From positions 124,001 to 188,000 of IMG/VR virus record IMGVR_UViG_3300034104_003795: a DNA stretch of 64,000 bases. One strand, 5' to 3'. Position numbers and translations under genes: made by a program. The notes below the pieces were generated by a model, which did no database searches, was not told where the DNA came from, and saw nothing but the letters and a program-made list of their open reading frames with translations. Positions 1-17,746 of this stretch are shown here, piece by piece (positions within the stretch are counted from its first letter, which is position 1; each line of letters opens with the position of its first letter).

Positions 1-548
1 AACATAATACAATCTAAATGCTTTAATACTTCGGTAGCTCCACTTAAAACAATCAACTCAGCACCTTCAACATCCATATTTAAGAAATTGTAAGTATTTT
101 TATTTTCAACCAATTTATCTAATGTAATGGTTGGTACTTCAATTTCAGCAATATGTTCATACGGTACCCAAGATGAATCTCTACCCCACTCATTGATTTT
201 AAAAATAGAATCAGTACCACCATCGTAGTTACTCAAATTAAAAGTAATAACACCATCTTCTTTATCGCTAACTGCGTAGTTATATGCTTTGTATCCTTTT
301 AGAATTTGGGCTTCACTATCGTTAAAATAAGAATATGTAAGTGGTGAACACCAAGTAACATATCTACCGGTATTTAATGATTCGCTTAAATTGCTGAATC
401 TAAATGGATTTGCTTCAACGAGTATCACATCTTTTATACCAGCTTTTACATAAGCTAACGTTTCACCGCCTTCATGTGCCCCAACGTGTAGAACACCATT
501 TATTTTAATATTGTATTTTTCTAACAATTGGTTAAAATCTAACATCAT
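1..548 (-). CDS. FkbM-family (Methyltransf_21) SAM-dependent methyltransferase, partial (runs off left edge); not in ORF track
   Basis: Manual translation from ATG at 548: MMLDFNQLLEKYNIKINGVLHVGAHEG...ILVEANP...FLNMDVEGAELIVLSG, with no stop before base 1. The HVGAHxG, EANP and MDVEGAE motifs are typical of FkbM. Confidence 0.85.
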   Translation of the reverse strand, partial: MMLDFNQLLEKYNIKINGVLHVGAHEGGETLAYVKAGIKDVILVEANPFRFSNLSESLNTGRYVTWCSPLTYSYFNDSEAQILKGYKAYNYAVSDKEDGVITFNLSNYDGGTDSIFKINEWGRDSSWVPYEHIAEIEVPTITLDKLVENKNTYNFLNMDVEGAELIVLSGATEVLKHLDCIM

Positions 549-559
549 AGTTTATAAGT

Positions 560-1936
560 TTATTTATTGTAATTTTCTAGGTAATATTTTAAATCTTCAG
601 GTGTACCTAATCCCCACATTTTTTCAATATTGAATGTTTTTATTTTTTTACCATCACCAATTGCTTCATTGAAAACAGGACAAACATAGAATTCATTATT
701 TACTCTTATATTTTTATTAATCATTTGTTCTGCATACTTTACATAATCAGAACCTTTAGCCCAATAGTAAACACCAACAGTTGCTATATCTGAAATTGGA
801 TTCTTCTCTTGTACTTCGGTTACATAACCATACTCATCCACTTTAGCAAATGACCATTTAGGATGAGTTGAATGAAATGAAAGGATACCACCATCAACTT
901 TTTGTTCAATCATCTTATACATAAACTCATTTGAATCCCACTCTATAAATTGGTCAGAGTTTGCCATCAATAAAGGTGCATCGGAATCAATCAATTCTTT
1001 TGCCAATAGAGTAGTACATGCTGCACCTTCTGTCAATCCATCAACTTCCACAATCTTACAATTAGGCGTAATTAAGTTTAAAAGGGTATCCAAGTTATAC
1101 TTCTCTCTATGTGATTTCTGAACTACATAGATAAATGTAGCATCTATGTTTAGGTTATCAACTACAACCTGAATCATTGGTTTACCTTCCACATCAATTA
1201 GTGGTTTAGGGAACGTATATCCGGCTTGTTGAAATCTAGTTCCTGCACCTGCCATTGGGATAAGTACGTTCATCTTACCACCTTGCCATTTTGGTTTACT
1301 CATAACTTTCTTTTCGTTTAATTTGTTTACTATTTTTTCTAATGTCAAATCATGTGGATTATCTACTCTCAAAACATTTGCTCTACTTCTACTCGCAGCT
1401 AACAAACCGGGTGGTGAATCTTCTACAATTAACGTTTCTTCTGGTAATACACCCATCATACTCATAGCCTTCCAATACATTTCAGGATGTGGTTTAGAGT
1501 TCTTTACATCCTCATTAGAAAGGATTAAATCCATATACTCAATAAGTCCTATCTTTGATAACATAACCAATACAGACCTTCTAATTGAATTTGAAGCACA
1601 TGCTAATTGATAACCTCTATCTCTCAACTCTTTGAATACCGAAACCAATACATGATTAGTTTGTAATTGGGATATTGCCTCAATAGTTAAGTGTTGTTTT
1701 CTATACCAAATTTCATCATAGAAATCGGTATGTAACCCTTTATTTTTAGTAAGCATTTCAAGCTTTTGAGTTGTCTTTAATCCATCGTATATTGATAGAT
1801 GTTCAGCTTCGGTAATTACATAAGAATTACCAGTTAGAATTTCGATTTCTCTCAATGCCTGGTTTAATGTATTGTAGTGTATTTCTTTTGCTTCAACTAG
1901 TACACCATCTAAGTCAAAGATAATTAATTTTGTCAT
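560..1936 (-). CDS. HAD-family phosphatase fused to BcbE-like sugar-phosphate nucleotidyltransferase
   Basis: N-half has FDLDGVL, KPHPEMY and VEDS HAD motifs. C-half has IPMAGAGTRF..GYTFPKPLI, ANSDQ and GLGTPEDL. Start trimmed to MTKLIIFD (ATG 1936). Confidence 0.85.
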   Translation of the reverse strand: MTKLIIFDLDGVLVEAKEIHYNTLNQALREIEILTGNSYVITEAEHLSIYDGLKTTQKLEMLTKNKGLHTDFYDEIWYRKQHLTIEAISQLQTNHVLVSVFKELRDRGYQLACASNSIRRSVLVMLSKIGLIEYMDLILSNEDVKNSKPHPEMYWKAMSMMGVLPEETLIVEDSPPGLLAASRSRANVLRVDNPHDLTLEKIVNKLNEKKVMSKPKWQGGKMNVLIPMAGAGTRFQQAGYTFPKPLIDVEGKPMIQVVVDNLNIDATFIYVVQKSHREKYNLDTLLNLITPNCKIVEVDGLTEGAACTTLLAKELIDSDAPLLMANSDQFIEWDSNEFMYKMIEQKVDGGILSFHSTHPKWSFAKVDEYGYVTEVQEKNPISDIATVGVYYWAKGSDYVKYAEQMINKNIRVNNEFYVCPVFNEAIGDGKKIKTFNIEKMWGLGTPEDLKYYLENYNK

Positions 1937-1937
1937 A

Positions 1938-2633
1938 TTACCAAATTCCTCTATCAAACGGGTTTATATTATATTCTTCAAAAATAGGATTTAATTCGGT
2001 TTGATATTCTGTTAAATTCCATTTACCTTTATTAATCGCAGTTGCTATGTATGGAAATACAAAACTATCATAATGGAATATTCCTCTTTTTTTCTCAATA
2101 CCATTCGTTGCTGAAAAATCTTTTTCATTCAACTTTATAGAATCTTCAAATTCATAAATTGTTAATTCTAAATGATTTTCTATTAACTCCTTAAATGTTT
2201 TAGTTTTAATAATAGTTGGTTGTATTGAAAATTTAGATAAATCATTTTGAACCAAAGTATCTTCAAATTCCGATTTTGTTCCACCCGAACCAGCATATAA
2301 TAATTTTATACTATTAGCTTTATCGGTTAAAATATATTCATAATATTTTTCTAAATATACGTGAAGTGGATTGGAATATAAAATCATATCTTCGTGAAAA
2401 AATAATATCACATCTTCATTTATTTTATCCAAACATTCTAAAATACGATTTGTATATTTTTTAGAATCATCATATGTGATTTGTAAGCAATTTTCTGGAA
2501 GTGCCTTATCAATTTCATTAACACATACATAGAGTTTATAATCAGGCATAAATTTATTTAATTGCCCAAAAAAAGATGGCCATACATCTTTCATATCCGT
2601 ATGCGTGTATATTACTAACGGTAGTTTATTCAT
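1938..2633 (-). CDS. Putative GT-A-fold glycosyltransferase / glycan-related hypothetical
   Basis: Likely start MNKLPLVIYTHTD at 2633. It has a FFHEDMIL DxD-like motif and sits in the glycan cluster. Confidence 0.5.
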   Translation of the reverse strand: MNKLPLVIYTHTDMKDVWPSFFGQLNKFMPDYKLYVCVNEIDKALPENCLQITYDDSKKYTNRILECLDKINEDVILFFHEDMILYSNPLHVYLEKYYEYILTDKANSIKLLYAGSGGTKSEFEDTLVQNDLSKFSIQPTIIKTKTFKELIENHLELTIYEFEDSIKLNEKDFSATNGIEKKRGIFHYDSFVFPYIATAINKGKWNLTEYQTELNPIFEEYNINPFDRGIW

Positions 2634-3348
2634 AAAAATAAGATATTTCTTTTGAGTATTGAGAATATGGGTCCATGTAAGGTCTTGTTTTTCTACCATG
2701 TGTAAATTCATCAATAGAAGAACCAACATCTACATATTGGTTATTTGGATTAGCCCTATACATTTCATCTATTAGTATTTCAGAAACAGGACCCGCAGAT
2801 ACAAAAAATGTTTGATTCTCTAATTGGGATACATATTCAATTAGTTGTGTAATATAGTCCTCACCATAATCTAACCAATATCTTATACAATCATCTGGAA
2901 ATGGAAATATTTCATTTACTTTAAATGGAAAATTTTCTTTCCTAGCTCTATGATTACATATAACATATACACTCTTATCTAATGTTTTATAAAACTCATA
3001 CATCTTTTGATAATTTGAATTTATCCAAAGATTTGCAAAAGTTTTATTTGAGTTTTGAATTCTATCTGATAAGAAAGTATAATCATCAATACTATCCGAA
3101 TGAGCTGATATTGCATAATGGTAATTGGTTTCGGTATGTTCCAATGATTTTAATAAACCTTCACCAACTTTATTTAATCCAATTGGAGTAGTCCATCTAT
3201 CAACTGCAAATGCTTGTGAATTAGTACCAATTGCATTACCTTTCATCAAACCAACTTCACCGTCAGCATATCTTGCATAAGCAAAATTTGTATCCGATTT
3301 TATAAGATTGGTGTAGTATTCAAAATCTGTTTGAAATTTATTCTGCAT
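2626..3348 (-). CDS. GT-D-fold (DUF1792-like) glycosyltransferase-like protein
   Basis: AYARYADGE resembles the GT-D RxGDGE motif; C-terminal VSAGP...YVDVGS. Confidence 0.55.
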   Translation of the reverse strand: MQNKFQTDFEYYTNLIKSDTNFAYARYADGEVGLMKGNAIGTNSQAFAVDRWTTPIGLNKVGEGLLKSLEHTETNYHYAISAHSDSIDDYTFLSDRIQNSNKTFANLWINSNYQKMYEFYKTLDKSVYVICNHRARKENFPFKVNEIFPFPDDCIRYWLDYGEDYITQLIEYVSQLENQTFFVSAGPVSEILIDEMYRANPNNQYVDVGSSIDEFTHGRKTRPYMDPYSQYSKEISYFYE

Positions 3349-4342
3349 CTAATATCTTTTTAATTTTTTCCGCTGCTCTACCGTCTCCATATGGACAAGG
3401 TTTACAAATATACGAATTCTTTTCCAACTCACCAAATAATTCTTTAAGTTTAGTTGGTTCTTCGCACATATAAAGATGACCGGTTTTTATACCTTCAGGT
3501 CTTTCGGTTGTTTTTCTACACACAATTATTTTCTTATTAAAGAAAGAACCTTCTTCTTGCAATCCACCACTATCGGTAACTACCAACTTACAATCTTTAA
3601 GAATATTAATCGTTTCATTGTGCGTTAAAGGTTCTACGATATTAATATTTGTTAGTAAATTCTTATGCTTTTGTACGTTTGGATTTGGATGAATCGGTAA
3701 TACAAATTTGTATTGTGGATAATCAATTGCTAACTGATTAATTACATTAAACCATTCATCTAACCAATGATGATTTTCTCTACGATGCATTGTTACTAGA
3801 ATAGTATCACCATAACTACCTTTATCATACTTCATAAGATTATCCAATACAGTATTCCCAACTATATGGATATCTCCTTTTACTCTTTCCGCATCTAAAT
3901 TTTCAGCAGAAAGCTGTGTTGGTGCAAAATTAATATCTGCTAAACGAGCTATCATCTGTCTATATCCTTCTTCAGGATATGGGTTTTCTAAATCGTAACT
4001 CCTTAACCCAGCTTCCATATAATATATCTTAATACCTCTATGATAAGCTGCTAATGCACATGCAAAAGCGGAAGCCGTATCGCCTTGCACCAACACACCT
4101 CTAAATTTGTAATTTGGAAAATATTCCATACAACTAATCATAATAGAATCTAATCTAGTATAACGAAAGGATTCTTTTATATTAACTCTAAAATCAACTT
4201 TTACATCCGAAAGTAAATCTTCATGTTGACCTGTGAATAAAAGTTTATATTCTTTCTTATCCATAATATCAATCAATGGTTTTACTTTCAACCATTCTGG
4301 TCTAGTACCAAAACATATTAATATTGGGTCTTTCTTATTCAT
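3338..4342 (-). CDS. wecB: UDP-N-acetylglucosamine 2-epimerase (non-hydrolysing)
   Basis: FGTRPE, FTGQH, VQGDT, EAGLRS, PEEGYRQ, HRREN and TDSGGLQEE motifs. Confidence 0.95.
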   Translation of the reverse strand: MNKKDPILICFGTRPEWLKVKPLIDIMDKKEYKLLFTGQHEDLLSDVKVDFRVNIKESFRYTRLDSIMISCMEYFPNYKFRGVLVQGDTASAFACALAAYHRGIKIYYMEAGLRSYDLENPYPEEGYRQMIARLADINFAPTQLSAENLDAERVKGDIHIVGNTVLDNLMKYDKGSYGDTILVTMHRRENHHWLDEWFNVINQLAIDYPQYKFVLPIHPNPNVQKHKNLLTNINIVEPLTHNETINILKDCKLVVTDSGGLQEEGSFFNKKIIVCRKTTERPEGIKTGHLYMCEEPTKLKELFGELEKNSYICKPCPYGDGRAAEKIKKILDAE

Positions 4343-5525
4343 TTTTATTTACTCCCCATTTTTGAATTGCTTTATTGTATTCTCTACCATATTCTTTATC
4401 TATACTCTGCCTCATAGCTTTTGCACCAGCCAAAGTACCATCAGGATGCCCATGAAGTGCACCACCAACATTTGCCATATAATCAATACCAACTTTATCA
4501 GTTACCCATTGAGTAAGACCAGGATGGAAACCACAGCTTAATGCCGGCATTACACCATATTGGTGCAATACTTTCATTGAATCAATTACCTCATCTTCAG
4601 GCCATTTGTAATATCCACCAATCATTCCGGCGTGAATAAAATCAACACCCATCATACCTGCTAACTTACAAATTACCGTCCAATCAATATAATAAGCGTG
4701 ATTTCTATTGGTTAGAATTTTATCACCACTTTTTTGAAAATGTACAAATATTGGTAAGTCTAATTCTCTTACAGCCTTATAAACCCCCATACCACACCAA
4801 AAATTAATATGAACACCATTACCACCCAACTCATATACTCTCTTTACTCTATCTAAAATATGTGGATAATCTGAATGAATAGATACACAATAAACTACAT
4901 TTTTATCTTTTAAATATTCTGCAATCAATGGTACTCTTTCTTCAATTGTACAAAAAGCGGGATTACTCATAATCTCATCTTCTTTAATGAAATTAACGCC
5001 ACCTTCTACTAATTCTTTAACCATCTCTAATAATGTCTGCGGAGTGATACCAATTTTAGGTTTCACAATTGCACCAAACAACGGTTTATCAAATGTTTTA
5101 GTGTATTCTCTAATACCTTTAATACCAAATTTAGGTCCTAAAAATAAATCTTCAATATGTTGTGGAAACCAGATATCTTTAACAGCACATTTTGTAATAT
5201 TATCAATATCCATCTGCCCACCCATAATATTTACCAACAAATGTGCAATCCCATCCGTTTTAAAATCAATGTTTATAACAGGAAACGCTACCTTAACTAA
5301 TCCATTATTAATAGATTTAAGCTCATCTTCATCTCCCAATACTAAACAACTATTTCTCTCAAATAGCTCATCAGTTTCCCATTGATTTCTTACATTTGGA
5401 TTACCTACACTTTGGCCTATTGCCAAATTCCAAGCGGCATCTCTTAAATTAGTTTCAGATGCCAAATCATAAGTAACAATAAAGTACTTTTCTATATCTA
5501 CTTCTTTTCTAAAAATATTTACCAT
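4335..5525 (-). CDS. RuBisCO-like protein (form IV RLP)
   Basis: GPKFGIKGIRE, GAIVKPKIG (K175/K177), GGVNFIKEDE (K201/D203/E204), DFIHAG (H327), PALSCG and VGGALHGHPDG. E60, N123, H294 and K334 equivalents appear substituted. Confidence 0.92.
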   Translation of the reverse strand: MVNIFRKEVDIEKYFIVTYDLASETNLRDAAWNLAIGQSVGNPNVRNQWETDELFERNSCLVLGDEDELKSINNGLVKVAFPVINIDFKTDGIAHLLVNIMGGQMDIDNITKCAVKDIWFPQHIEDLFLGPKFGIKGIREYTKTFDKPLFGAIVKPKIGITPQTLLEMVKELVEGGVNFIKEDEIMSNPAFCTIEERVPLIAEYLKDKNVVYCVSIHSDYPHILDRVKRVYELGGNGVHINFWCGMGVYKAVRELDLPIFVHFQKSGDKILTNRNHAYYIDWTVICKLAGMMGVDFIHAGMIGGYYKWPEDEVIDSMKVLHQYGVMPALSCGFHPGLTQWVTDKVGIDYMANVGGALHGHPDGTLAGAKAMRQSIDKEYGREYNKAIQKWGVNKNE

Positions 5526-5526
5526 A

Positions 5527-5847
5527 TTATATAACGTATTTATCGCCAGGTATTGACGGAGTTTTTATAATTAAGACTGTACAATCTTCTAAAAAGATTG
5601 GGTCAGCAATTTCGTATGGGTTTAAAATAAAGATATCACCTTCATTTAATTCTTTGTCTTGTATGGTCATTTTTCCACTAACCAAATAATTTATTTCAGT
5701 ACCAGCTTTGTGATAATGAGTATCCCATTTTTCACCTTTAGTGTGGTGTTTATAACAAACCTCAAACTGGTCTGTTTTAAAAGCAGTTGGTTCAAAGTTA
5801 CCAATAAACCATCCACCTTTCATGTCTTTCATTTTAAGAATGTCCAT
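5527..5847 (-). CDS. Small cupin-domain protein (possible sugar epimerase/isomerase)
   Basis: HYHK..TEINYLVSG metal-binding cupin motif 1 and GDIFILNP motif 2. Confidence 0.8.
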   Translation of the reverse strand: MDILKMKDMKGGWFIGNFEPTAFKTDQFEVCYKHHTKGEKWDTHYHKAGTEINYLVSGKMTIQDKELNEGDIFILNPYEIADPIFLEDCTVLIIKTPSIPGDKYVI

Positions 5848-6562
5848 ATAATTGTTTGTATTTATTTAAATCCTCTGGTACACCAATTGGCCAATGTAAG
5901 TTATAAAAGAATGGTAATATTTTTTTCCCATCTTTAATAAGATAATTGTATGATGGTGCTATATAAAATTCGTTATTATACCTTTCACCAGATTCTATCA
6001 TTTCTTTTGCCGAAGATACGAAATCTTTTCCATGTTTCCAAAAATGTAATCCATTAGTTGCAGTATTACTGATTACAATCTTTTCTTTAACTTCAGTAAC
6101 CTCACCTTGTGGGTCTAATTTCATATATGAATTTTTCTTTGATGATGATATAAATGCACCTAATATACCATCTGCTTCATTTTTGTCACAAAACTCTAAA
6201 AGTTTATTAACATCAAAATCATGTATCATTTGGTCACAATTAACAATAATCAATGGAGTATCTTCATCTATATAATCACTAGCTAACAATGCGGTACATG
6301 CTGGTCCTTCTGTTAATTCATCTATTTCAATTACAACCGAATCGGGTTTTAGTGATTTTAAAAAGGTTTGTAAACTATTTCCTACTGAATGCTTTTTTTG
6401 AATTATAAAAATATGTTTCCCATCTATATTTAGATTTTCAACAACTGATTGTACCATTGGTTTTTTGTTTACCGGAATAAATGGTTTTGGTATCGTATAT
6501 CCTACATCGGAAAATCGTTTACCTTCGCCGGCCATCGGTATTATTACATTAACTTTTCTCAT
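5834..6562 (-). CDS. BcbE-like sugar-phosphate nucleotidyltransferase
   Basis: IPMAGEGKRF..GYTIPKPFI, VNCDQ, NEFYIAP and IGVPEDL; paralog of the C-half of 560..1936. Confidence 0.85.
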   Translation of the reverse strand: MRKVNVIIPMAGEGKRFSDVGYTIPKPFIPVNKKPMVQSVVENLNIDGKHIFIIQKKHSVGNSLQTFLKSLKPDSVVIEIDELTEGPACTALLASDYIDEDTPLIIVNCDQMIHDFDVNKLLEFCDKNEADGILGAFISSSKKNSYMKLDPQGEVTEVKEKIVISNTATNGLHFWKHGKDFVSSAKEMIESGERYNNEFYIAPSYNYLIKDGKKILPFFYNLHWPIGVPEDLNKYKQLYGHS

Positions 6563-6565
6563 TTG

Positions 6566-7162
6566 TTACGTTTTAAATGCTTCTATGTTTTTATAATGAC
6601 TCAAATAATTGTTATATTTTTGCCAATAAATGTCAACTCTATCTTTTTCTAGATTTTTGAGAATGAAATTGATTTTTTTATCAAATCCAAGCTCAAACAA
6701 TCTATTTGTAAATGCAACTTCTGCGTGTGGTACATTAAAATCTGAAAATGTAAATAATTGAATCATATCATCAACATTTCCTTCCGATAAATAATCTACC
6801 AAATATCCGGCATTATGTTGGTGATATGCTAGAAAATTTAAACAATCACTTTTAAACGATTTAAATATTTCTTCACAATTGATTGGGAACAAATCATATC
6901 TCCACTTTACAACTCTATCGTATCCCAGTTCTTTTGCCTTTATAAATCCATTTAAAGACGATACTCTTTGTAAATTTAAATTACCAACTCCAACTATTTC
7001 TGGTCTAGGGCTATATACAACCACATCGTTTTTATCCGGATAACAATAGGTTGGCTCCCCTTCCCATGTTGAAAAAATAATAGGAAATGGTTTCCAATCA
7101 TTTTTCAATTTTTCTATATTATCACAAATAGTGCTACCTTGTATAACAATTGCCGTTTTCAT
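6566..7162 (-). CDS. WavE-like glycan biosynthesis protein
   Basis: AIVIQG, IIFSTW, NLNLQRVSSLNG and VVKWRYD follow the WavE family pattern. Confidence 0.55.
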   Translation of the reverse strand: MKTAIVIQGSTICDNIEKLKNDWKPFPIIFSTWEGEPTYCYPDKNDVVVYSPRPEIVGVGNLNLQRVSSLNGFIKAKELGYDRVVKWRYDLFPINCEEIFKSFKSDCLNFLAYHQHNAGYLVDYLSEGNVDDMIQLFTFSDFNVPHAEVAFTNRLFELGFDKKINFILKNLEKDRVDIYWQKYNNYLSHYKNIEAFKT

Positions 7163-8933: not shown

Positions 8934-9549
8934 ATAAAGCGTTTTGTTTTTCTTGTCTTTCAATTTGCTTATGATGATACAAACAATAAATTTCTTCCTG
9001 AGGTAATATTGATAATGTATTATATCCCGCTATCCTTTCATGTACCTTACCACTCCATTCTATTTCAGAAGTTCTTCTATAAATACGAGTTTGATAGTCA
9101 GGAAAATTTACCCAACCGTTTTCATTAACTTTCCATCCCCATTTCTTAATATGTTCGGCAGTTAAACCATTCACCGTATTAATTCTAGGTACGAAGAAAA
9201 GGTCTACATCTTTATTATAATCTAAAAAGTTGTGAATATTTTCAACCAAATATTCGGATGGCATTTCATCTGCATCAATTTGAAAAATAAAAATACCGTT
9301 TGCATTATTTTTTAAATTATTCTTAAATGATGCAAAATCTTTATTAAGAGGAAATGAAATTACTCTTATATTCTTATGTATTTGTGAGATTATATTTAAA
9401 TAATCTTTTATCTGCGATGTTGCAGAATCGGAATCATACTGAACCAGTATTTCATCTTCGGATTTTATCCTAGGTTGTAGGAAATCAACTAAAGTTGTGA
9501 TTTCATTTATTTCATTACAAACTGTAATGGCGTATGTAACATTTATCAT
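8920..9549 (-). CDS. GT2-family glycosyltransferase
   Basis: YAITVCNE, FQIDADE, PDYQTRIY and VHERI motifs. Confidence 0.85.
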   Translation of the reverse strand: MINVTYAITVCNEINEITTLVDFLQPRIKSEDEILVQYDSDSATSQIKDYLNIISQIHKNIRVISFPLNKDFASFKNNLKNNANGIFIFQIDADEMPSEYLVENIHNFLDYNKDVDLFFVPRINTVNGLTAEHIKKWGWKVNENGWVNFPDYQTRIYRRTSEIEWSGKVHERIAGYNTLSILPQEEIYCLYHHKQIERQEKQNALYDTI

Positions 9550-11212: not shown

Positions 11213-11218
11213 ATTTTA

Positions 11219-14200
11219 TTAATGCAATTGTACCCAAGCCCCATTCGCGTATCCCATAAATTTATGAGTAGTTGAATTGTATATCATATCTCCATTCGCA
11301 GGAGTTAAACTTCCAGTTTGTACATCAGTAAATGTTGCCATTCTCATTGGTGATTGCGTTACAATTACCGCAGTACCAGCTGTTAAGTTTAAGTTAGTTG
11401 CCGATGTTATTTCAGGTGTACCGGTTGCATATATGTTAAATCCAGATGCACTTATCGCACCACTAACAAACATAGAACCTGTTAGTTTCATTTCTGCTCC
11501 ATCGAATGTGAGAGTATTACTTACAAATAATCTTTCAGGTGAATTTTCGTATCTAACTAACCCATTATTTACACTTCCAGTTACAGCTAATAGGGATGCA
11601 ACTCCAGAAGTTCCAGATGTACCATTCGTACCAGATGTGCCATCAACACCACTTGTACCAGTCACACCAGATGTACCAGATGAACCAAATGCAGTACCGT
11701 CTAAACCATTTTTACCAGATGAACCAGACGTACCATCAGAACCATTTGCTCCAGGTGCACCATTTGTTCCAGATGTACCACCACTACCAGCAGTTGCTCC
11801 TGCTGCGGTTAAACCACTTGTACCAGAAGTTCCAGAGCTACCACTAGTACCCATAGTACCGTTTTCTCCATTTAATCCCGATGAACCAGATGAACCAATA
11901 AATGTTCCATCTTTACCAGATGTACCAGATGACCCAAAAAATCCAGATATACCAGATGTACCGGAAGTACCATCTGAACCATTTACACCAGATGTTCCAT
12001 CTTTACCAAATCCAGATGAACCAGATGTACCAGATGAACCAACAAATGTTCCATCTTTACCGGAAGTACCGGATGTACCATCTTTACCAGATGAACCTGC
12101 ACTACCCGCACCACCACCGGTTCCTGCGGTGATTGTTATATGTCCACTACCAGGTGTATTAGTTACAACCGCCCCACCGGTAAATGTTATTTGATTTACA
12201 CCACTAATAGATGTAGGTCCAACATCATCATTTATTGTTAATGCAATAGATGTACCAGAACTACCACTTGAACCGGATGTACCGGCTGTTCCACCTATAC
12301 CAGTTATTCCAGATGAGCCAGATGTACCATCGGTACCAGGTGCCCCAATACCATTAAGTCCAGATGTTCCAGATGAGCCATCTTTACCAGATGTACCAGA
12401 TGTACCGCCACTTCCACTTACTCCTGCGGTTCCAGATGAACCAGAAGTTCCACCACCACCATCTTTACCAGATGTACCAGAAGTACCATTTGAACCCCCA
12501 CCGCCTACACCACCGGCTACAGTAAGTGCAACGGTACCGCCACCACTATTCGTAGCACGAATTGTATTATCCAATGTTAATGTGGTTGTTGCAGCTGCGG
12601 AGAATGAACCACTATTAATTGTAAGTCCACCACCACCACCACCGGTTGTTATAGTTACTTGTCCGCCACCATCATCTGCAACAACGGCTCCATTGAATCG
12701 TATTGTACGAACTGAACCAAAAGAACTACCACCTTGTTGAGATACTGTTATCGCTCCAAATGAAGATGTAGCTATTATTCTAGATATATCATTAACTCCA
12801 CCAACCCAAGCATATCCTTGTGGAAGTGAAGCAGATAAAGGTCCACTTACTTGTAGAGAACCTGTAATTTGTATATTATTTGTTGTTGCGAATACCGAAC
12901 CGGTTGCCGCAAATATTCCAGTACCACTACCAGCACTACCAAATGAAGATGTTGCTACTAAAATTGTTCTATTATTAGGACCACCTACCCAAGCATATCC
13001 TTCTCTTAAAGATGAAGTAATTGAACCACTAATATTCAAATTTTTACCAAATGTAACATCAGCATCGTCAAATGCAACTGCTTCAAAGGTTCTAAAATGT
13101 AGTTCATGATAGAGATTACCAGCTTTTGTATAAAGTTCTCCTTTGGCATTAGTACTTTTATCAGTCCACAATATTGAAGAATTTTCTTCCTGTGCTCCTC
13201 TAGAATCAGAACCTAAATCTAAAATTTGAACGGTAGGACCATACAACATACCACCATATTGTGTTTTACCAATTCGTATAGAACCGGTAATATGCAGAGA
13301 ACCACTAATATGTGCAGAACCAGTATAAGGGAATACAGTTGTTGTTAAACCAGATGTTCCCGCAGTTCCACTTATTCCAGATGAACCAGATGAGCCAGAA
13401 GTTCCAGATGAACCAGAGCTTCCAGAAGTTCCTGATGAACCACTTGTACCATCTAAACCGGTTGTACCATCTTTACCGGATGTACCAGAAGACCCACTTG
13501 AACCAGATGTTCCAGAACTACCACTACTTCCAGATGTACCAGATGAACCAGAAGTTCCAGATGAACCAGAGCTTCCAGAAGTTCCAGATGAACCACTTTG
13601 ACCAGGTGCACCTGCCGTATTTATATACCATGAAGTTATACCAGTACCACTACCTGATGTAGTTGTTATATTAACCACTAAATCACCTGTACCGCTGTTA
13701 TAAGATGTTACAGTTCCTTCTAATACATTTGATGCATTTTCAGAAATAATAATAGCCTGTCCAGGAGTCCATTGTAATCCAGTTCCTATTGTGAAATTTT
13801 TAGAACCAGTGCTTATATTGTTTGAAGTACTCGATGTTGATGAGAATCTATCACCATTTTGTCCAGAAGTTCCAGATGAACCCGATGAACCAGATGTACC
13901 ATCTTTACCAGATGTACCAGATGAACCGCTACTACCAGATGTTCCAGATGAACCGGAAGTACCACTCTCTCCAGAAGTTCCAGATGAACCTGAACTTCCA
14001 GAAGTTCCAGAACTACCACTACTTCCTGATGTGCCATCTTTACCAGATGTACCAGAAGAACCGGATGTACCTGAACTTCCTGATGTGCCATCTTTACCGG
14101 AAGTACCAGAAGAACCACCACTACCAGCAGTACCAGCAGGTCCACTAGCTATTGAAGTTGTTTTTCCTATTGTTTTTGTAGAACTATTGTAAACTAATAC

Positions 14201-14470
14201 TTCACTTGCAACAGCATCGGTTGAAATATTATCAAATCTTAAACTACCAGAAATTAAAACACTACCAGTAAATTGTCCGCTTAATTGTCCACTTAAAGTT
14301 GATAGATTCGATACGGATGAAGATACTGATGTTAATGTTGAATTTAAATTATCAGTTGTTGTATATAATGTATTTACGGAACTTGATACGTTTTCTAAAA
14401 TCGTCAAGTTGGCATCCATTTCTGCCGCCGTTAAGGGACTACCCTTTGGTATTCTTTTTATTATTGCCAT
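11219..14470 (-). CDS. Gly/Ser/Thr-rich collagen-like fibre protein (probable virion fibre)
   Basis: Long Gly-X-Y runs (GTS GSS GKD) separated by repeated TGSxxITGS-type fibre segments; C-terminal GDMIYNSTTHKFMGY. Confidence 0.7.
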   Translation of the reverse strand: MAIIKRIPKGSPLTAAEMDANLTILENVSSSVNTLYTTTDNLNSTLTSVSSSVSNLSTLSGQLSGQFTGSVLISGSLRFDNISTDAVASEVLVYNSSTKTIGKTTSIASGPAGTAGSGGSSGTSGKDGTSGSSGTSGSSGTSGKDGTSGSSGSSGTSGSSGSSGTSGESGTSGSSGTSGSSGSSGTSGKDGTSGSSGSSGTSGQNGDRFSSTSSTSNNISTGSKNFTIGTGLQWTPGQAIIISENASNVLEGTVTSYNSGTGDLVVNITTTSGSGTGITSWYINTAGAPGQSGSSGTSGSSGSSGTSGSSGTSGSSGSSGTSGSSGSSGTSGKDGTTGLDGTSGSSGTSGSSGSSGTSGSSGSSGISGTAGTSGLTTTVFPYTGSAHISGSLHITGSIRIGKTQYGGMLYGPTVQILDLGSDSRGAQEENSSILWTDKSTNAKGELYTKAGNLYHELHFRTFEAVAFDDADVTFGKNLNISGSITSSLREGYAWVGGPNNRTILVATSSFGSAGSGTGIFAATGSVFATTNNIQITGSLQVSGPLSASLPQGYAWVGGVNDISRIIATSSFGAITVSQQGGSSFGSVRTIRFNGAVVADDGGGQVTITTGGGGGGLTINSGSFSAAATTTLTLDNTIRATNSGGGTVALTVAGGVGGGGSNGTSGTSGKDGGGGTSGSSGTAGVSGSGGTSGTSGKDGSSGTSGLNGIGAPGTDGTSGSSGITGIGGTAGTSGSSGSSGTSIALTINDDVGPTSISGVNQITFTGGAVVTNTPGSGHITITAGTGGGAGSAGSSGKDGTSGTSGKDGTFVGSSGTSGSSGFGKDGTSGVNGSDGTSGTSGISGFFGSSGTSGKDGTFIGSSGSSGLNGENGTMGTSGSSGTSGTSGLTAAGATAGSGGTSGTNGAPGANGSDGTSGSSGKNGLDGTAFGSSGTSGVTGTSGVDGTSGTNGTSGTSGVASLLAVTGSVNNGLVRYENSPERLFVSNTLTFDGAEMKLTGSMFVSGAISASGFNIYATGTPEITSATNLNLTAGTAVIVTQSPMRMATFTDVQTGSLTPANGDMIYNSTTHKFMGYANGAWVQLH
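11580..14130 (-). repeat. Degenerate 9-nt-period coding repeats (GTS/GSS/GKD triplets) in several blocks
   Basis: Recurrent plus-strand units such as ccagatgaa, ccagatgta and ccagaagtt, around 11.6-12.5, 13.35-13.6 and 13.86-14.13 kb. Confidence 0.85.
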
Positions 14471-14534
14471 GGTTTTATTCTACTTGTGTGTAATTACACA
14501 AATAAATATAAATAAATGGAAGAAATAAACACTT

Positions 14535-15053
14535 TTAAGGATTTTCCGGTTTAGGGGGAGATTGCTTTGGTTTTGGTATCTTAAGAAACTTTAAAAAGTC
14601 ATCAGTAATAAACTTAACTTCCTTTATGGATTTCACATTATTAAGTAAATAGGTTCTATATGTACCAGGCTGATGTTCATATATTCCATGTCTTTTTAAT
14701 TCTTGAAATGTTTTTGAACCAATCTTATTATCGGGTGACAACAACTCATCTAAAGTATTTTTTTCTGCAATTTCTTTAATTTCATCGTATTTCAATCCCC
14801 TTTTTAAATTCAACTTTAGCCAATGAAAGAATTTTTCAGGTCGCGCTTCACTTATCTTTATACAATGTAGTACTTTATCAGGTGTAATACTAATTAAAAA
14901 AATAATAGCACTTTGAGGCCCATTAAACGAAGTAAGTTTTCCACCAACATACTCATACGAAACTATTTTATAAATTCGTCTTGGAGTTAGTTTTGTTTTA
15001 GGAACTATGGATTCTCTTTGTATCAGCCTATTATATAAGTTTCCGTATGGCAT
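14535..15053 (-). CDS. Hypothetical protein
   Basis: 172 aa ORF abutting the upstream GT4 gene; no recognised motif. Confidence 0.65.
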   Translation of the reverse strand: MPYGNLYNRLIQRESIVPKTKLTPRRIYKIVSYEYVGGKLTSFNGPQSAIIFLISITPDKVLHCIKISEARPEKFFHWLKLNLKRGLKYDEIKEIAEKNTLDELLSPDNKIGSKTFQELKRHGIYEHQPGTYRTYLLNNVKSIKEVKFITDDFLKFLKIPKPKQSPPKPENP

Positions 15054-16357
15054 TAACCTATTTTATTAAGTTTTGGTAATTGAATTTTTTGACTATTTAC
15101 TGTAGGTGCGTTAAATGGAACTACTTGAGGTGCTCTTTTTACATAAGTATTAAGTATTTCTTCAAATCTTTCCGTCATTTTTTCTAAAGTAAAACTTTTA
15201 AGAGTATTTTCTCTTAATCTAACGGATTGTGACTTATATGTGTTATAGTTCTTATATACATCATATAATTTATTTGCCGCATTTGAATAGTGTACCGTAA
15301 ACCATTGTGCTTCTTTCATACAAAACTGGTCTGCTGCTGAATCGTGTACATTTGTCAACGAACCCTCTAATAAAACCGCATGTTCTTTTGGTAAGAAATC
15401 GGTATGTCCACTCCAACCACTAGCTATAATTGGTTTACCCGTCAAACTAAATTCAGCCATAGGTCTACCATACCCTTCACCCTTCGCAAATGATACCATT
15501 GCTTTAACCTTCGGATGATGGTATAGATTACTCATATCGCTTTCTTCCATATCACCATGAAGTAAATAAATAGGTGGACACTTATCACCAAAACTCTTTA
15601 TAACTTCTTCAATTTTCTTTCTAGTAGCTTCTCTATCCATTACACTAAATCCGGCATGCGATGTCTTTATGATAAGAGCTGGTTTGTTTTCTTTGGTATA
15701 TTGGAATACGGTTGCAAATGTTTTAATTGCCATACCAATATCTTTTCTATCTTGTCCCAAGTCTCCTTTCAACCAATGTCCAACAACTAAAAAACAAAAA
15801 TCTTCTTTTATATTTTCTAAAATATCAGTATTTGTTTTAGATGGTACGGATGATTCAAATATATCGGTATCAACTCCTTCAAAAAGCACTTCAATTGGCT
15901 TTACAACTCTAATTTCACCAACTATTTCATCAGTTTGTTGATTTTTTTGTTGATAAACAGTTCCACCTAAATTTTGTCTTGTGAAATGAGATGGTACTAA
16001 TATCAAATCCATTTTGTTAGAACCATCAATGAAATCTTTTGGAGCGATTGTAGTTTCAACACCGGCAGTTATACCAATATTATAGTGCCCTTTTGGTTCA
16101 AATTCATTTGCTACCGAAACTTGCATAAACACATCCGGCTTTTGTTCTACTACTCCTACAACTCTTTCAAGCATCCATCTACCAAATTCATCTTGGTCAG
16201 TTACTTGATTTTGTGGAGTGTTACCCCAACGAAGTGGGATAATCTTAATATCATATTTATCCATTTTGCGTAGTGATTTCATCAAATCTCTACAATGGTC
16301 CCCATATCCACTTCTCGTAAAAATAGGTCCCTGAAATACTAATGTTGGTTTACTCAT
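15053..16357 (-). CDS. GT4-family glycosyltransferase
   Basis: SGYGDH, DRKDIG and KGEGYGRPMAE..GKPIIASGWSGHTDF (EGxGxPxxE motif). Confidence 0.85.
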   Translation of the reverse strand: MSKPTLVFQGPIFTRSGYGDHCRDLMKSLRKMDKYDIKIIPLRWGNTPQNQVTDQDEFGRWMLERVVGVVEQKPDVFMQVSVANEFEPKGHYNIGITAGVETTIAPKDFIDGSNKMDLILVPSHFTRQNLGGTVYQQKNQQTDEIVGEIRVVKPIEVLFEGVDTDIFESSVPSKTNTDILENIKEDFCFLVVGHWLKGDLGQDRKDIGMAIKTFATVFQYTKENKPALIIKTSHAGFSVMDREATRKKIEEVIKSFGDKCPPIYLLHGDMEESDMSNLYHHPKVKAMVSFAKGEGYGRPMAEFSLTGKPIIASGWSGHTDFLPKEHAVLLEGSLTNVHDSAADQFCMKEAQWFTVHYSNAANKLYDVYKNYNTYKSQSVRLRENTLKSFTLEKMTERFEEILNTYVKRAPQVVPFNAPTVNSQKIQLPKLNKIG

Positions 16358-16360
16358 AAC

Positions 16361-17746
16361 TTATTTAATTTTGAACACTTCAAATCTTTTTCTTGGTTTC
16401 CAATTCTCAAACACATCTTCAATCCCATCTATTAATTGTTGGGCCATATTGATATGTGTTAATCCCGCTTCATTGATAAAAAACTCTCTACCAATTAATG
16501 CGTTTGCTTTTCTTTCTTCTTTTGGTGTATTGTATGATTTAGCAATTGCTTGTGCAACATCTTCTATATCAACTCTATCATCCCAAATATACGGTGTTGG
16601 TACTGAACCTGCTAATGCTTGTGCTCTACTCCATACCGGATACGCCCAAGGACCAGGTTCTGCTTTACCTTCCCATTTTCTCCATTCATGTAAAGAACCA
16701 ATCTTAATATAATCATCTGCAACCAATACATTACCTTCAACTTTAAATCCACATTGGTCTTGCAATCCACCGGTTACGTTTACAATGATTGGAGTTCCAG
16801 CCATTATCGATTCTGCGGTTGCTAATCCAAATCCTTCGTTGTTAGCAATATTGATTGTTACATCTGCTATATTATAGTTCCAATTCAATTCTTGTTGAAC
16901 TCTTCTTTTTTCAGAAAAACGGATATTAATACCAGGTGTAAGTTCTTCAATTACAGCATACAAGTCAGTTCCATTTTCATCAACAGGCTGTGTATGCATT
17001 AATAAAAGACATTTATCCGCTTTATCTTTACCAATAATCTCACAAAATCTTTTATATGCCATTATTACATCGGCCGGTTGTTTTCTGCGAATATTTCTAT
17101 TACTCCAATACAATACAAAATCATATTCTTTACCACCTAAAATTTCATTACGATATTCCGCAGGTACTTCGGTTGGTTTGTAGATATCAGTATTAATACC
17201 GTGTGGTACATACTTTACTTGCCAATCTTTTAGAGGTCTCCATGTTACTTTATCGGTTCTAGAAGTAATTCTTTTTATAATACCATATGTTTGTCTTGAT
17301 ATACATCCAATCCAATCACAACTTTCATAATAATCTCTATTATACATTGGGTCTGGTAAATCATCCCAAATTGCGTAGAAAAGAATTGGAATATTTTGTC
17401 TGATTTCGTGTTCGATATCATACAACCATGTCCAATAACGAGGGTCAGTAAAGTGTAAGATTGCATCTGGGTTTTCTGAATTAATAATCTGCCTTAACAA
17501 ATCAGCATTTCCATACCCATTCCAAGGAAGTATTTTTAAACTAGCATCTGCTACTCCATAATTTTTTTGTATATCTTCGCTAACATCCAAAACCTTACCT
17601 TGTTCAGGATGGTTAATTGCCGCTCCAACTTGATACCAATCGTATTTGTGTATCGTACCCAATACGAATTCTTTTGACATTGTGGCTATACCACTTGCCA
17701 TTCTTAAATCATCCGAAAGTAATAGGATTTTTTTCTTTTTTGCCAT
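16361..17746 (-). CDS. GT4-family glycosyltransferase
   Basis: NRNIRRK and NEGFGLATAESIMAGTPII..TGGLQDQ. Confidence 0.87.
   Translation of the reverse strand: MAKKKKILLLSDDLRMASGIATMSKEFVLGTIHKYDWYQVGAAINHPEQGKVLDVSEDIQKNYGVADASLKILPWNGYGNADLLRQIINSENPDAILHFTDPRYWTWLYDIEHEIRQNIPILFYAIWDDLPDPMYNRDYYESCDWIGCISRQTYGIIKRITSRTDKVTWRPLKDWQVKYVPHGINTDIYKPTEVPAEYRNEILGGKEYDFVLYWSNRNIRRKQPADVIMAYKRFCEIIGKDKADKCLLLMHTQPVDENGTDLYAVIEELTPGINIRFSEKRRVQQELNWNYNIADVTINIANNEGFGLATAESIMAGTPIIVNVTGGLQDQCGFKVEGNVLVADDYIKIGSLHEWRKWEGKAEPGPWAYPVWSRAQALAGSVPTPYIWDDRVDIEDVAQAIAKSYNTPKEERKANALIGREFFINEAGLTHINMAQQLIDGIEDVFENWKPRKRFEVFKIK

What the first reader, a model, noticed from the sequence alone, without database searches (positions are those of the whole stretch)
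1..17746. Possible virion-glycosylation system: Ser/Thr-rich collagen-like fibre and subtilisin flanked by about 8 glycosyltransferase-like genes
Seen: a 1083 aa fibre with hundreds of Ser/Thr in Gly-X-Y triplets (GTS, GSS) lies with two GT4 genes upstream. Downstream are an S8 protease and then GT2, GT-B, WavE-like, GT-D-like, WecB and FkbM genes. Established: Thr-rich collagen-like surface fibres can be O-glycosylated (Bacillus anthracis BclA), and Pro-poor bacterial collagens exist. Inference: the fibre is the acceptor for the phage-made, possibly O-methylated glycan, giving a sugar-coated virion. The protease may mature the fibre. The alternative is modification of the host surface for superinfection exclusion.
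Basis: inference. Interest (0 to 1): 0.62.

Follow-up and report, generated by a model that had tools for sequence, protein, structure and literature searches.

The report
Sugar-enzyme island around a phage fibre
A large freshwater T4-like phage keeps a proline-free, serine/threonine-rich collagen-like fibre gene inside an old, phage-only cluster of soluble sugar-transfer and sugar-making enzymes, so a sugar-coated fibre is plausible and testable but not shown.

Summary
The observation largely holds. The fibre has 1083 aa and 144 Gly-X-Y triplets, with 196 Ser/Thr in X/Y and almost no Pro. An S8 protease with an intact catalytic triad follows it. Four firm and two probable glycosyltransferases (GTs) surround it, with WecB and FkbM.

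The island also runs about 12 kb past the window start, about 29 kb in all.

- **Core:** GT4–GT4-like–small ORF–GT2 keeps its order at 37–47% identity in phages of Flavobacterium and Microcystis. It is almost absent from 185,579 prokaryote genomes.
- **Membrane steps:** no island protein has a membrane segment. The genome shows no flippase, polymerase or priming transferase, and its ThyA is canonical.
- **Fibre slot:** 30 of 33 related contigs hold a GSS/GTS collagen fibre in the same slot, although its end modules were swapped at least 5–6 times.
- **S8:** it travels with one fibre C-terminal domain.
- **Composition:** all four collagen-like proteins of this phage are Pro-free and Ser/Thr-rich. 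P-SSM2, of similar GC, has Pro-rich ones.
- **Against:** two phages carry the GT core and no collagen, so the fibre is not the only acceptor.

Virion glycosylation is the best reading (about 0.4). Host-surface remodelling is the main rival (about 0.3).

The parts
16361..17746 (-). GT4-family glycosyltransferase (461 aa), first gene of the conserved phage GT core
   Evidence: Pfam Glycos_transf_1 and GT4-conflict. The best PDB sequence match is the chlorovirus NY-2A GT B736L, E 2e-8. E304-x7-E312 motif. 41-47% identical homologues sit in the same position in immuto, Mel-JY01 and two MAG-binned contigs.
15053..16357 (-). GT4-like glycosyltransferase (434 aa), second core gene
   Evidence: phrog_2170 E 2e-18. 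Paralogue of the 461-aa GT. E294 and E302 are invariant in alignment A3. Only 4 matches in 185,579 species genomes, all on MAG contigs.
14535..15053 (-). 172-aa protein of unknown function, third core gene; fast-evolving (29-60% identity where the GTs keep 76-87%)
   Evidence: Present in the core with or without the fibre. AF2 pLDDT 88.7, with no convincing fold match: best Z 5.2, a small beta-barrel.
11219..14470 (-). Modular collagen-like fibre (1083 aa): conserved N-terminus, GSS/GTS triple-helix runs, non-collagen domains at about residues 209-286, 377-652 and 742-782, and a C-terminal domain at about 990-1083
   Evidence: Pieces with 0-1 mismatches occur in two freshwater RNA libraries, which is not proof of transcription.
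9647..11212 (-). Subtilisin-like S8 protease (521 aa), 6 nt after the fibre; no membrane segment, N-terminal 100 aa unassigned
   Evidence: Pfam S8 and phrog_9158 E 1.5e-81. Triad and oxyanion Asn present. Co-occurs with the fibre C-terminal domain.
8920..9549 (-). GT2 glycosyltransferase (209 aa), fourth core gene; a TAnnTTTG motif lies 13 and 41 nt upstream
   Evidence: Pfam Glycos_transf_2. 40-46% identical homologues in the same order in immuto, Mel-JY01 and the MAG contigs. Motif.
7932..8930 (-). 332-aa probable GT-B glycosyltransferase
   Evidence: No HMM match. The AF2 model is poor (pLDDT 56.6). Its top Foldseek matches are all GT-B: PglA, BshA and Gtf3 of serine-rich-repeat protein glycosylation, E 4e-4 to 1e-3. 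Weak evidence.
7165..7980 (-). GT2 glycosyltransferase (271 aa)
   Evidence: Pfam Glycos_transf_2 E 6e-8.
6566..7162 (-). WavE-like protein (198 aa), first gene of the four-gene RLP cassette
   Evidence: BLASTP E 2e-11 to the Pfam WavE gene at L003:10932-11705.
5834..6562 (-). Sugar-1-phosphate nucleotidyltransferase (242 aa)
   Evidence: Pfam NTP_transferase E 6e-14. Next to the RLP in 69 of 78 loci.
5527..5847 (-). Small cupin (106 aa)
   Evidence: Weak Pfam Cupin_7 and Cupin_2 matches. phrog_24762 E 5e-36. Directly upstream of the RLP in 47 of 78 loci.
4335..5525 (-). RuBisCO-like protein (396 aa); not a carboxylase
   Evidence: Pfam RuBisCO_large E 6e-33. All NCBIfam scores are far below cut-off. 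Active-site map. No match in 50,697 phage records, but more than 2600 metagenomic homologues.
3338..4342 (-). Non-hydrolysing UDP-GlcNAc 2-epimerase (WecB)
   Evidence: TIGR00236, 229 bits against a cut-off of 210.
1938..3348 (-). Two conserved ORFs of unknown function (240 aa, and 263 aa that is probably 231 aa)
   Evidence: No family match. 525 homologues, all 'hypothetical'.
560..1957 (-). Fusion of a HAD-IA (beta-phosphoglucomutase-like) domain and an NTP_transferase domain (465 aa)
   Evidence: Pfam HAD_2 E 1e-29 plus NTP_transferase E 1e-10. NCBIfam beta-PGM family match, below cut-off.
1..548 (-). FkbM-family methyltransferase; the 230-aa gene runs off the window start (genome 123856-124548)
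   Evidence: Pfam Methyltransf_21 and TIGR01444.
61836..63998 (-). C-terminal part of a 3069-aa GSS/GTS collagen-like protein next to the tail sheath gene; a further candidate acceptor

Best explanation
The span is most of a roughly 29-kb glycan island in a 274-kb freshwater T4-like myovirus.

**Backbone.** The backbone is an old, phage-restricted module next to the replication genes. It reads PD-(D/E)XK nuclease | GT4 - GT4-like - small ORF - GT2, followed by further GTs and a supply of activated and decorated sugars. The supply genes are WecB, a HAD-nucleotidyltransferase fusion, a nucleotidyltransferase-cupin-RuBisCO-like cassette, FkbM methyltransferases, APS kinase and a sulfotransferase.

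**Inserted cassette.** A swappable host-recognition cassette sits between the small ORF and the GT2. It is a fibre with a conserved N-terminus, Pro-free GSS/GTS collagen runs and exchangeable distal modules. One distal module always comes with an active S8 protease.

**Proposed mechanism (inferred).** The soluble enzymes make nucleotide sugars and build methylated, possibly sulfated, O-glycans in the cytoplasm directly on phage structural proteins. The main acceptors would be the Ser/Thr side chains of this fibre and of the three other collagen-like proteins. The glycans would stabilise and shield triple helices that have no proline. S8 would process, or dock on, the fibre's C-terminal domain.

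**Shown:** gene identities, their order and its conservation, fibre composition, absence of membrane and lipid-carrier parts.

**Inferred:** the acceptor, the glycan, and the role of S8.
For: 1. The collagen fibre occupies the slot between the 172-aa ORF and the GT2 in 30 of 33 distinct contigs. The with-S8 and without-S8 states changed at least 5-6 times on the GT tree.
2. X/Y positions are 63-79% Ser/Thr in all these fibres, although triplet numbers range from 34 to 159.
3. All four collagen-like ORFs of this genome are Pro-free with Ser/Thr at 0.68-0.87 of X/Y, 675 triplets in all. Mel-JY01 and contig G001, which carry the GT core, have the same type. P-SSM2 has no homologue of the core's GT4-like gene, is of similar GC by my recollection, and has Pro at 0.37-0.53 and Ser/Thr at 0.17-0.29.
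4. None of the 22 island proteins has a membrane segment. The genome's few membrane proteins are DUF454, TerC and unknowns. No Wzx, Wzy, WecA or GtrA type was found.
5. The GT core keeps its order at 37-47% identity in phages of Flavobacterium and Microcystis and on contigs binned with other phyla. It has only 4 matches in 185,579 species genomes. An acceptor conserved across such hosts is most simply a phage component.
6. ThyA passes the thymidylate-synthase equivalog cut-offs and is the only PF00303 match, so no hydroxymethyl-pyrimidine route for DNA sugars was found.
7. The 461-aa GT's nearest solved relative is a chlorovirus GT.
8. S8 and the fibre C-terminal domain co-occur: 77 loci with both, 56 with neither, 17 and 3 discordant.
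9. Precedents, from my own knowledge or papers cited: O-glycosylated mycobacteriophage capsid and tail proteins (Freeman 2023), BclA, Mimivirus fibrils.
Against: - No glycan was observed, and no GT here can be assigned to protein O-glycosylation by sequence.
- Immuto and the complete contig G006 have the GT core and no collagen protein. At least three contigs have the core without the fibre in the slot, and one of them keeps the fibre elsewhere. The core therefore does not need this fibre.
- Soluble GTs also act on lipid-linked intermediates made by host enzymes.
- The sample of lineages is small and related, so the link between composition and GT core may be one historical event.
- The collagen runs could be flexible Gly/Ser-rich spacers.
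- A host-type promoter motif precedes the GT2 gene but not the fibre, so co-expression is not shown.
- The S8-fibre complex prediction gave no verdict.
Confidence: 0.4

Rival explanations
1. Host-surface remodelling. The enzymes divert or extend host lipid-linked glycans (O-antigen, capsule, S-layer glycan) during infection to block other phages. The fibre lies among them only because both sit in the hypervariable host-recognition region.
For: This is the standing reading for P-SSM2's 24 'LPS' genes and for pelagimyophage host-recognition clusters that mix fibres and GTs. WecB, WavE and GT2 families are typical of envelope polysaccharide loci. A host-type TAnnTTTG motif precedes the GT2 operon. 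The core exists without collagen proteins.
Against: No priming transferase, flippase, polymerase, ligase or GtrA/B type protein was found in the genome. The core is conserved in order across phages of hosts from different phyla and is nearly absent from cellular genomes, which is hard to square with host-specific acceptors. There is no sign of lysogeny in the window.
Confidence: 0.3
2. The island glycosylates other virion proteins (capsid, sheath, other fibres), and the 1083-aa fibre is not an acceptor. Its position is a recombination hot spot.
For: The core is present in phages without collagen. The fibre cassette was exchanged and relocated repeatedly. Mycobacteriophage glycans sit on capsid and tail-tube proteins (cited).
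Against: The Ser/Thr-rich, Pro-free composition is shared by all four collagen proteins and was seen only in core-bearing phages. The fibre persists in the slot in 30 of 33 contigs.
Confidence: 0.12
3. DNA glycosylation. The GTs next to the replication genes put sugars on modified bases to evade restriction.
For: The core always follows a PD-(D/E)XK nuclease and lies beside the clamp loader and polymerase. GT-B enzymes glucosylate T4 DNA, and T4 alpha-glucosyltransferase appears among the weak fold matches. Diverse DNA glycans are known (Pyle 2024, cited).
Against: The only thymidylate-synthase homologue is a canonical ThyA. Six or more GTs with methyl and sulfate decoration exceed the known DNA glycans.
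Confidence: 0.05
4. The products are free or lipid-bound small glycoconjugates used in host takeover, unrelated to the virion.
For: Several enzymes have no assignable substrate: the RLP, the cupin, and the ORFs of 172, 240 and 263 aa.
Against: Nothing positive supports it, and it does not explain the conserved link to the fibre.
Confidence: 0.1

Closest known systems
Mycobacteriophage virion O-glycosylation (Freeman et al. 2023, cited)
   Same: Phage-encoded soluble GTs beside structural genes. Cytoplasmic O-glycosylation of Ser/Thr-rich stretches of virion proteins is the mechanism proposed here.
   Different: There, one to a few GTs act on C-terminal tails of capsid and tail-tube proteins of siphoviruses, and the glycans were measured. 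Here there are at least 6 GTs plus sugar synthesis, collagen-like fibres of a T4-like myovirus, and nothing measured.
Bacillus anthracis BclA exosporium collagen-like glycoprotein (own knowledge)
   Same: A Gly-X-Y filament with hydroxy amino acids that carry O-glycans containing methylated sugars. Its biosynthetic genes lie nearby.
   Different: BclA is GPT-rich, with Pro in X. This fibre is Pro-free, with Ser in Y. No homology exists outside the repeats.
Mimivirus fibril glycosylation and chlorovirus capsid glycosylation (own knowledge; Chem Rev review PMC9614988 listed, not read)
   Same: Virus-encoded, host-independent sugar synthesis and GT clusters that decorate surface fibrils or capsids. 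Collagen-like genes are present. The 461-aa GT's best solved relative is chlorovirus B736L.
   Different: Those are eukaryotic giant viruses. The sugars, enzymes and acceptors differ.
'LPS' gene clusters of cyanomyovirus P-SSM2 and host-recognition clusters of pelagimyophages
   Same: T4-like aquatic phages with large GT and sugar clusters, in pelagimyophages interleaved with fibre genes.
   Different: Those were read as host O-chain modification. P-SSM2 lacks a homologue of the core's GT4-like gene, and its collagen proteins are Pro-rich.
GtfA/GtfB/Gtf3 glycosylation of serine-rich repeat adhesins (own knowledge; Gtf3 and GtfC among the fold matches)
   Same: Cytoplasmic GT4-type GT-B enzymes working in series on long Ser-rich repeats. 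Here there is a pair of paralogous GT4-like genes and a roughly 330-aa GT-B.
   Different: No sequence-level membership. The fold match rests on a poor model. No SecA2/Y2 export system is present.
Phage 'form IV-like' RuBisCO-like proteins (Jaffe et al. 2018)
   Same: The 396-aa RLP is of this kind: divergent, on myovirus contigs, lacking carboxylase residues.
   Different: That work left the function open. Here the RLP is tied to a nucleotidyltransferase and a cupin inside a glycan island.

Membership tests
Collagen-like triple-helix protein (Pfam PF01391) | Long uninterrupted Gly-X-Y runs | tested here: met
   144 triplets, runs of up to 33; Pfam E 2.5e-41.
Collagen-like triple-helix protein (Pfam PF01391) | Forms a trimeric triple helix | not testable with these tools
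   Pro-free GSS/GTS runs with GKD triplets. Stability is unknown and needs CD or EM.
BclA-type glycosylated collagen-like filament | O-glycans on Thr/Ser of the repeats | not testable with these tools
   Only composition (196 Ser/Thr in X/Y) and neighbouring GTs are known.
Phage virion glycosylation system (mycobacteriophage type) | Phage-encoded soluble GTs genetically linked to a structural protein gene | tested here: met
Phage virion glycosylation system (mycobacteriophage type) | Glycan demonstrated on virion protein | not testable with these tools
   No proteomic or staining data are at hand.
Gtr-type or Wzx/Wzy-type host O-antigen modification | Membrane flippase, bactoprenol transferase, polymerase or priming transferase | tested here: not met
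   No membrane segments in 22 island proteins. The genome's membrane ORFs are DUF454, TerC, unknowns, or off-frame artefacts of collagen DNA.
GT4 retaining glycosyltransferases | GT-B C-terminal domain with an E-x7-E motif | tested here: met
   E304..E312 in the 461-aa protein. E294..E302 in the 434-aa protein, invariant in A3.
Subtilase (peptidase S8) | Asp-His-Ser triad and oxyanion Asn in order | tested here: met
   The DSG, GHGTH, AAGN and GTSMA motifs align to keratinase 5wsl.
Bona fide RuBisCO (forms I-III) | Full set of catalytic residues (spinach numbering) | tested here: not met
   Aligned to T. kodakarensis RbcL. Kept: K175, K177, K201, D203, E204, H327, S379, G381, G403/404. Replaced: N123>G, H294>Q, R295>K, H298>D, K334>Y, E60>G, T65>N, W66>P. 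Every NCBIfam score is far below its cut-off.
Known RLP functions (MtnW enolase, OiaX and others) | Score above the family cut-off and the matching pathway neighbours | tested here: not met
   149 bits against 409 for MtnW, and 140 against 700 for OiaX. The neighbours are a nucleotidyltransferase, a cupin and methyltransferases.
T4-type DNA glucosylation | dCMP or dUMP hydroxymethylase to provide the acceptor base | tested here: not met
   The single PF00303 match passes the thymidylate-synthase equivalog cut-offs.
Non-hydrolysing UDP-GlcNAc 2-epimerase (WecB) | Score above the TIGR00236 equivalog cut-off | tested here: met
   229.2 bits against 210.15.

The most novel reading that the evidence does not exclude
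A lineage of large aquatic T4-like phages builds its fibres from proline-free Gly-Ser/Thr-Ser collagen. These helices would fold and survive only because a phage-only GT core coats them with methylated and sulfated O-glycans. One sugar would be made by the phage RuBisCO-like protein together with a nucleotidyltransferase and a cupin, which would be the first assigned role for phage form IV-like RLPs: making a nucleotide sugar.
Probability: 0.15. Interest if true: 0.85.

Novelty: new variant of a known kind. Interest (0 to 1): 0.6.

Why it matters
**Reach of virion glycosylation.** It has been measured only in a few actinobacteriophages. If it holds here, it extends to abundant freshwater T4-like phages and to their host-recognition fibres. 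That bears on receptor binding, particle stability and escape from host or grazer recognition.

**A different reading of phage 'LPS' islands.** These are usually read as host-surface modification. The features that argue for a phage-intrinsic acceptor are a phage-restricted core, conservation across host phyla and the absence of lipid-carrier parts.

**Protein chemistry.** It would be a natural case of collagen triple helices without proline.

**The RuBisCO-like protein.** The conserved trio of nucleotidyltransferase, cupin and RLP gives these proteins, reported without function, a concrete biochemical setting.

**Testability.** Two cultured relatives make the ideas testable now. Mel-JY01 has the core plus GTS/GSS collagen. 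Immuto has the core and no collagen.

Tried and rejected
- **Megablast** of bases 1-18000 against 50,697 phage records: no match.
- **Complex prediction**, S8 with fibre residues 945-1083: no verdict, so not evidence either way.
- **T4 late promoter** TATAAATA: not enriched, 14 on the coding strand against about 49 expected.
- **Sigma-70 and terminator scans:** at chance level.
- **172-aa ORF:** a confident model but no convincing fold relative. The Atlas gave no hit.
- **332-aa ORF:** a poor model, so its GT-B matches are only a lead.
- **263-aa ORF:** 525 homologues, all unnamed.
- **148-aa RLP neighbour family:** viral hypothetical proteins only.
- **Non-collagen fibre domains and the S8 N-terminus:** no Pfam family, and only marginal PHROG matches.
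- **Fibre C-terminus against the proteins upstream of S8 in Sf-FR1 and P-SSM2:** no similarity. The C-terminus-S8 link therefore holds only for the metagenomic set with S8 identity of 45% or more.
- **'Moraphage' paper:** a different, non-T4 lineage.
- **Cyanophage idea:** weakened. No psbA is present.
- **Marine origin:** wrong. The holders are lake metagenomes.
- **ORFs with many membrane-like segments at genome 193-200 kb:** off-frame readings of collagen DNA.
- **One Pfam call** failed through my own frame error and was repeated.

Full report
**Setting**

The window is bases 124001-188000 of a single 273,997-bp virus contig of 33% GC. CheckV rates it complete. Nearly all genes are on the minus strand.

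Beside the finding lie a PD-(D/E)XK nuclease, clamp-loader subunits, a family-B DNA polymerase, ribonucleotide reductase and a DnaB-type helicase. A tail sheath gene lies further on. So this is a T4-like myovirus.

It has no psbA. Its nearest isolates are Microcystis phage Mel-JY01 (polymerase 48% identical) and, for the GT genes, Flavobacterium phage immuto. The DNA occurs in lake-water metagenomes of at least 16 studies, so it is a freshwater phage.

A TAnnTTTG motif is enriched between genes: 49 intergenic copies against 17 expected. From my own knowledge it resembles the Bacteroidota -7 promoter box. Two small contigs with close GT homologues are binned in Bacteroidetes MAGs. A Bacteroidota host is possible but not shown.

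**What is in the span**

In transcription order, with window coordinates:

| Coordinates | Gene | Basis |
|---|---|---|
| 16361-17746 | GT4, 461 aa | Pfam; best solved relative is chlorovirus B736L |
| 15053-16357 | GT4-like, 434 aa | phrog_2170; paralogue of the first; both carry E-x7-E |
| 14535-15053 | 172-aa ORF | Confident model, no known fold |
| 11219-14470 | Fibre, 1083 aa | See below |
| 9647-11212 | S8 protease | Complete triad |
| 8920-9549 | GT2 | |
| 7932-8930 | 332-aa ORF | Poor model that resembles GT-B enzymes |
| 7165-7980 | GT2 | |
| 6566-7162 | WavE paralogue | |
| 5834-6562 | Nucleotidyltransferase | |
| 5527-5847 | Cupin, 106 aa | |
| 4335-5525 | RuBisCO-like protein | |
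| 3338-4342 | WecB | Above the equivalog cut-off |
| 1938-3348 | Two unknown ORFs | |
| 560-1957 | HAD-nucleotidyltransferase fusion | |
| 1-548 | FkbM | Cut by the window start |

Past the window start the island goes on for about 12 kb. It adds a third GT2, a HAD-like protein, an APS kinase, a P-loop kinase, an HNH gene, a DUF454 membrane protein, WavE, a SET-domain protein and a sulfotransferase. The whole island is about 29 kb.

It over-counted GTs (4 firm plus 2 probable in the span). It also missed the sugar-activation genes and the RuBisCO-like protein.

**The fibre**

It has 144 Gly-X-Y triplets in nine runs: GTS 46, GSS 37, GKD 10. X is mostly Thr or Ser, and Y is Ser in 88 triplets. 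That gives 196 Ser/Thr in X/Y, with only three Pro in the repeats. The coding repeats are diverged, so periodicity and composition are maintained by selection.

The non-collagen parts are modular. Across relatives they are present or absent independently:
- an N-terminus whose first roughly 26 residues are conserved;
- domains at about residues 209-286, 377-652 and 742-782;
- a C-terminal domain.

Pieces of the gene with 0-1 mismatches occur in two freshwater RNA libraries. That is compatible with expression but does not prove it.

*S8 as the anchor.* With S8 as the probe, 79 IMG/VR loci were fetched. About 20 of them, with S8 at least 63% identical, show the same order: GT4, GT4-like, small ORF, collagen fibre, S8, GT2, 332-aa ORF, GT2. 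More distant ones have a non-collagen fibre upstream of S8 and no homologues of the island's GTs in the flanks fetched.

*The GT4-like gene as the anchor.* With it as the probe, 80 loci were fetched. Where the contig reaches far enough:
- 37 have a collagen ORF right after the small ORF;
- 14 have a fibre cut by the contig end;
- 4 go straight to the GT2.

*Tree of the GT4-like protein.* It covers 33 distinct contigs with the whole slot: 20 have fibre plus S8, 10 have the fibre alone, and 3 have nothing. Well-supported branches force at least 5-6 changes of the S8 state and 2 losses. So the fibre's distal part is exchanged often, while a GSS/GTS collagen fibre stays in the slot.

*Conservation.* The GTs keep 76-87% identity. 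The small ORF keeps only 29-60%, and the fibre varies most.

*The fibre can move.* One contig without the fibre in the slot (G001) has, elsewhere in the genome, a fibre with the same N-terminus and GSS collagen.

**S8**

Presence of S8 follows presence of the fibre's C-terminal domain, about the last 90 residues:

| | S8 present | S8 absent |
|---|---|---|
| C-terminal domain present | 77 | 3 (two at a contig end; in the third the domain is internal) |
| C-terminal domain absent | 17 | 56 |

This holds down to 45% S8 identity, in phages without collagen or these GTs. Fibres without S8 end in a different module.

In cultured cyanomyoviruses, S8 homologues (27-38% identical) also follow fibre or baseplate genes. 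Those neighbours are not similar to this C-terminus.

So S8 is a partner of one distal fibre module. Whether it cleaves that module, or rides on it as an enzyme at the fibre tip, is open. The complex prediction gave no verdict.

**The GT core is older than the fibre insertion**

Immuto has: PD-(D/E)XK nuclease, GT (46% identical), GT (42%), a 152-aa ORF, GT2 (46%), then amino-sugar genes and more GTs. It has no fibre there. Mel-JY01 has the same core, with the small ORF not found there. So do a contig binned with a Methanobacteriota MAG and a 93-kb contig binned with Anaeromicropila.

A profile-guided scan of one genome for each of 185,579 prokaryote species found only these four MAG contigs. 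The family therefore looks phage-restricted.

**Which acceptor?**

*For a phage-intrinsic protein acceptor:*
- None of the 22 island proteins has a membrane segment. The genome has no recognisable flippase, polymerase, priming transferase or Gtr protein.
- The core is conserved across hosts of different phyla.
- The ThyA is canonical, which removes the usual basis for DNA sugars.

*For the collagen proteins in particular:*
- This genome has four collagen-like ORFs of 1083, 3069, 3729 and 1386 aa. All are Pro-free with Ser/Thr at 0.68-0.87 of X/Y. Two of them lie just upstream of the sheath gene.
- Mel-JY01 has a GTS/GSS collagen ORF with Ser/Thr at 0.84.
- P-SSM2 is of similar GC (from memory) and has no homologue of the core's GT4-like gene. 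Its collagen ORFs are Pro-rich.
- Contig G004 also lacks that gene. Its collagen ORFs have Ser/Thr at 0.21-0.33.

*Against:*
- Immuto and the complete contig G006 have the core and no collagen protein.
- The pattern is therefore one-way. Ser/Thr collagen was seen only with the core, but the core does not need collagen.
- The lineages sampled are few and related.

I rate virion-protein glycosylation that includes the fibres at about 0.4. Host-surface remodelling gets 0.3, virion glycosylation that spares this fibre 0.12, other products 0.1 and DNA 0.05.

**The RuBisCO-like protein**

- It matches no record among 50,697 phage genomes. It has more than 2600 metagenomic homologues, the 120 listed being 71-94% identical, on phage-like contigs.
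- Against T. kodakarensis RbcL it keeps the carbamylated-lysine and metal site and the K175/K177 pair. It loses N123, H294, R295, K334, E60 and T65. It is therefore not a carboxylase, though it could still enolise a phospho-ketose (inference).
- In 78 IMG/VR loci its neighbours are a nucleotidyltransferase (69), a 148-aa viral-only ORF (65) and the small cupin (47). TylF-type or FkbM methyltransferases and NAD epimerases are often nearby.
- In this island, WavE-like, transferase, cupin and RLP form a four-gene insertion that close relatives lack.
- Phage 'IV-like' RLPs were reported without a function. I found no paper linking them to a nucleotidyltransferase and a cupin.
- The inference is a role in making an unusual nucleotide sugar.

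**Limits**

- ORFs were called mechanically.
- Most comparison sequences are metagenome contigs and are not independent.
- Several statements about known systems rest on my own knowledge and are marked as such.
- Nothing here measures a glycan.

Noticed in passing
window 4335-7162 (-): A four-gene cassette of WavE-like, nucleotidyltransferase, 106-aa cupin and RuBisCO-like protein. It is absent from close relatives, where the GT2 gene is followed directly by WecB. The trio of transferase, cupin and RLP is conserved in most of 78 phage contigs. The RLP keeps the metal and carbamate site but lacks the carboxylase residues. A role in making a nucleotide sugar is inferred.
   Followed up: partly
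window 61836-63998 (-), continuing to genome 195045; also genome 197089-208278 and 225495-229655: Three further giant collagen-like ORFs of 3069, 3729 and 1386 aa, all Pro-free with GSS/GTS triplets (Ser/Thr 0.76-0.87 of X/Y). Two lie just upstream of the tail sheath gene. With the finding's fibre they make 675 triplets.
   Followed up: partly
L003 (genome 104001-124000), left of the window: The island continues about 12 kb beyond the window start. It holds a GT2 (386 aa), a 292-aa unknown ORF, a HAD-like protein, an APS kinase, an HNH gene, a P-loop kinase, a DUF454 membrane protein, WavE, a SET-domain protein and a sulfotransferase. APS kinase together with a sulfotransferase suggests sulfated products.
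   Followed up: partly
whole genome; window 9550-9646: TAnnTTTG is enriched in intergenic DNA (49 against 17 expected), and TTCGTATA more so (12 against 1.6). Copies lie 13 and 41 nt upstream of the GT2 gene at 9549. The motif resembles the Bacteroidota -7 promoter box. Two Bacteroidetes-binned contigs carry close GT homologues. A Bacteroidota host is possible.
   Followed up: partly
window 9600-15100: The stretch is held by lake-water metagenomes of at least 16 studies, so the phage is a widespread freshwater one. Two freshwater RNA libraries hold near-identical pieces of the fibre gene.
   Followed up: partly
genome 193014-200687, several frames: ORFs that look like multi-pass membrane proteins are off-frame readings of collagen-coding repeats. 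They should not be annotated as transporters.
   Followed up: yes
window 14471-14534: The 64-nt gap upstream of the fibre holds a short palindrome (GTGTAATTACAC) in an AT-rich stretch. The gap after S8 (9550-9646) holds a hairpin-like repeat. Their function is not known.
   Followed up: no
window 24069-25640 (-): A 523-aa ORF next to the DNA polymerase whose C-terminal part weakly matches a phage DNA methyltransferase family.
   Followed up: no
window 47869-56956 (-): Four large ORFs (903, 553, 652 and 801 aa) near the sheath gene have no PHROG match at E 1e-5.
   Followed up: no
related ENA contig of 149,854 bp (no DNA held): A relative has the GT island with the RLP but no fibre or S8 in the slot. 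It carries an extra 261-aa ORF between the cupin and the RLP, and a Hint/intein-containing gene downstream.
   Followed up: no
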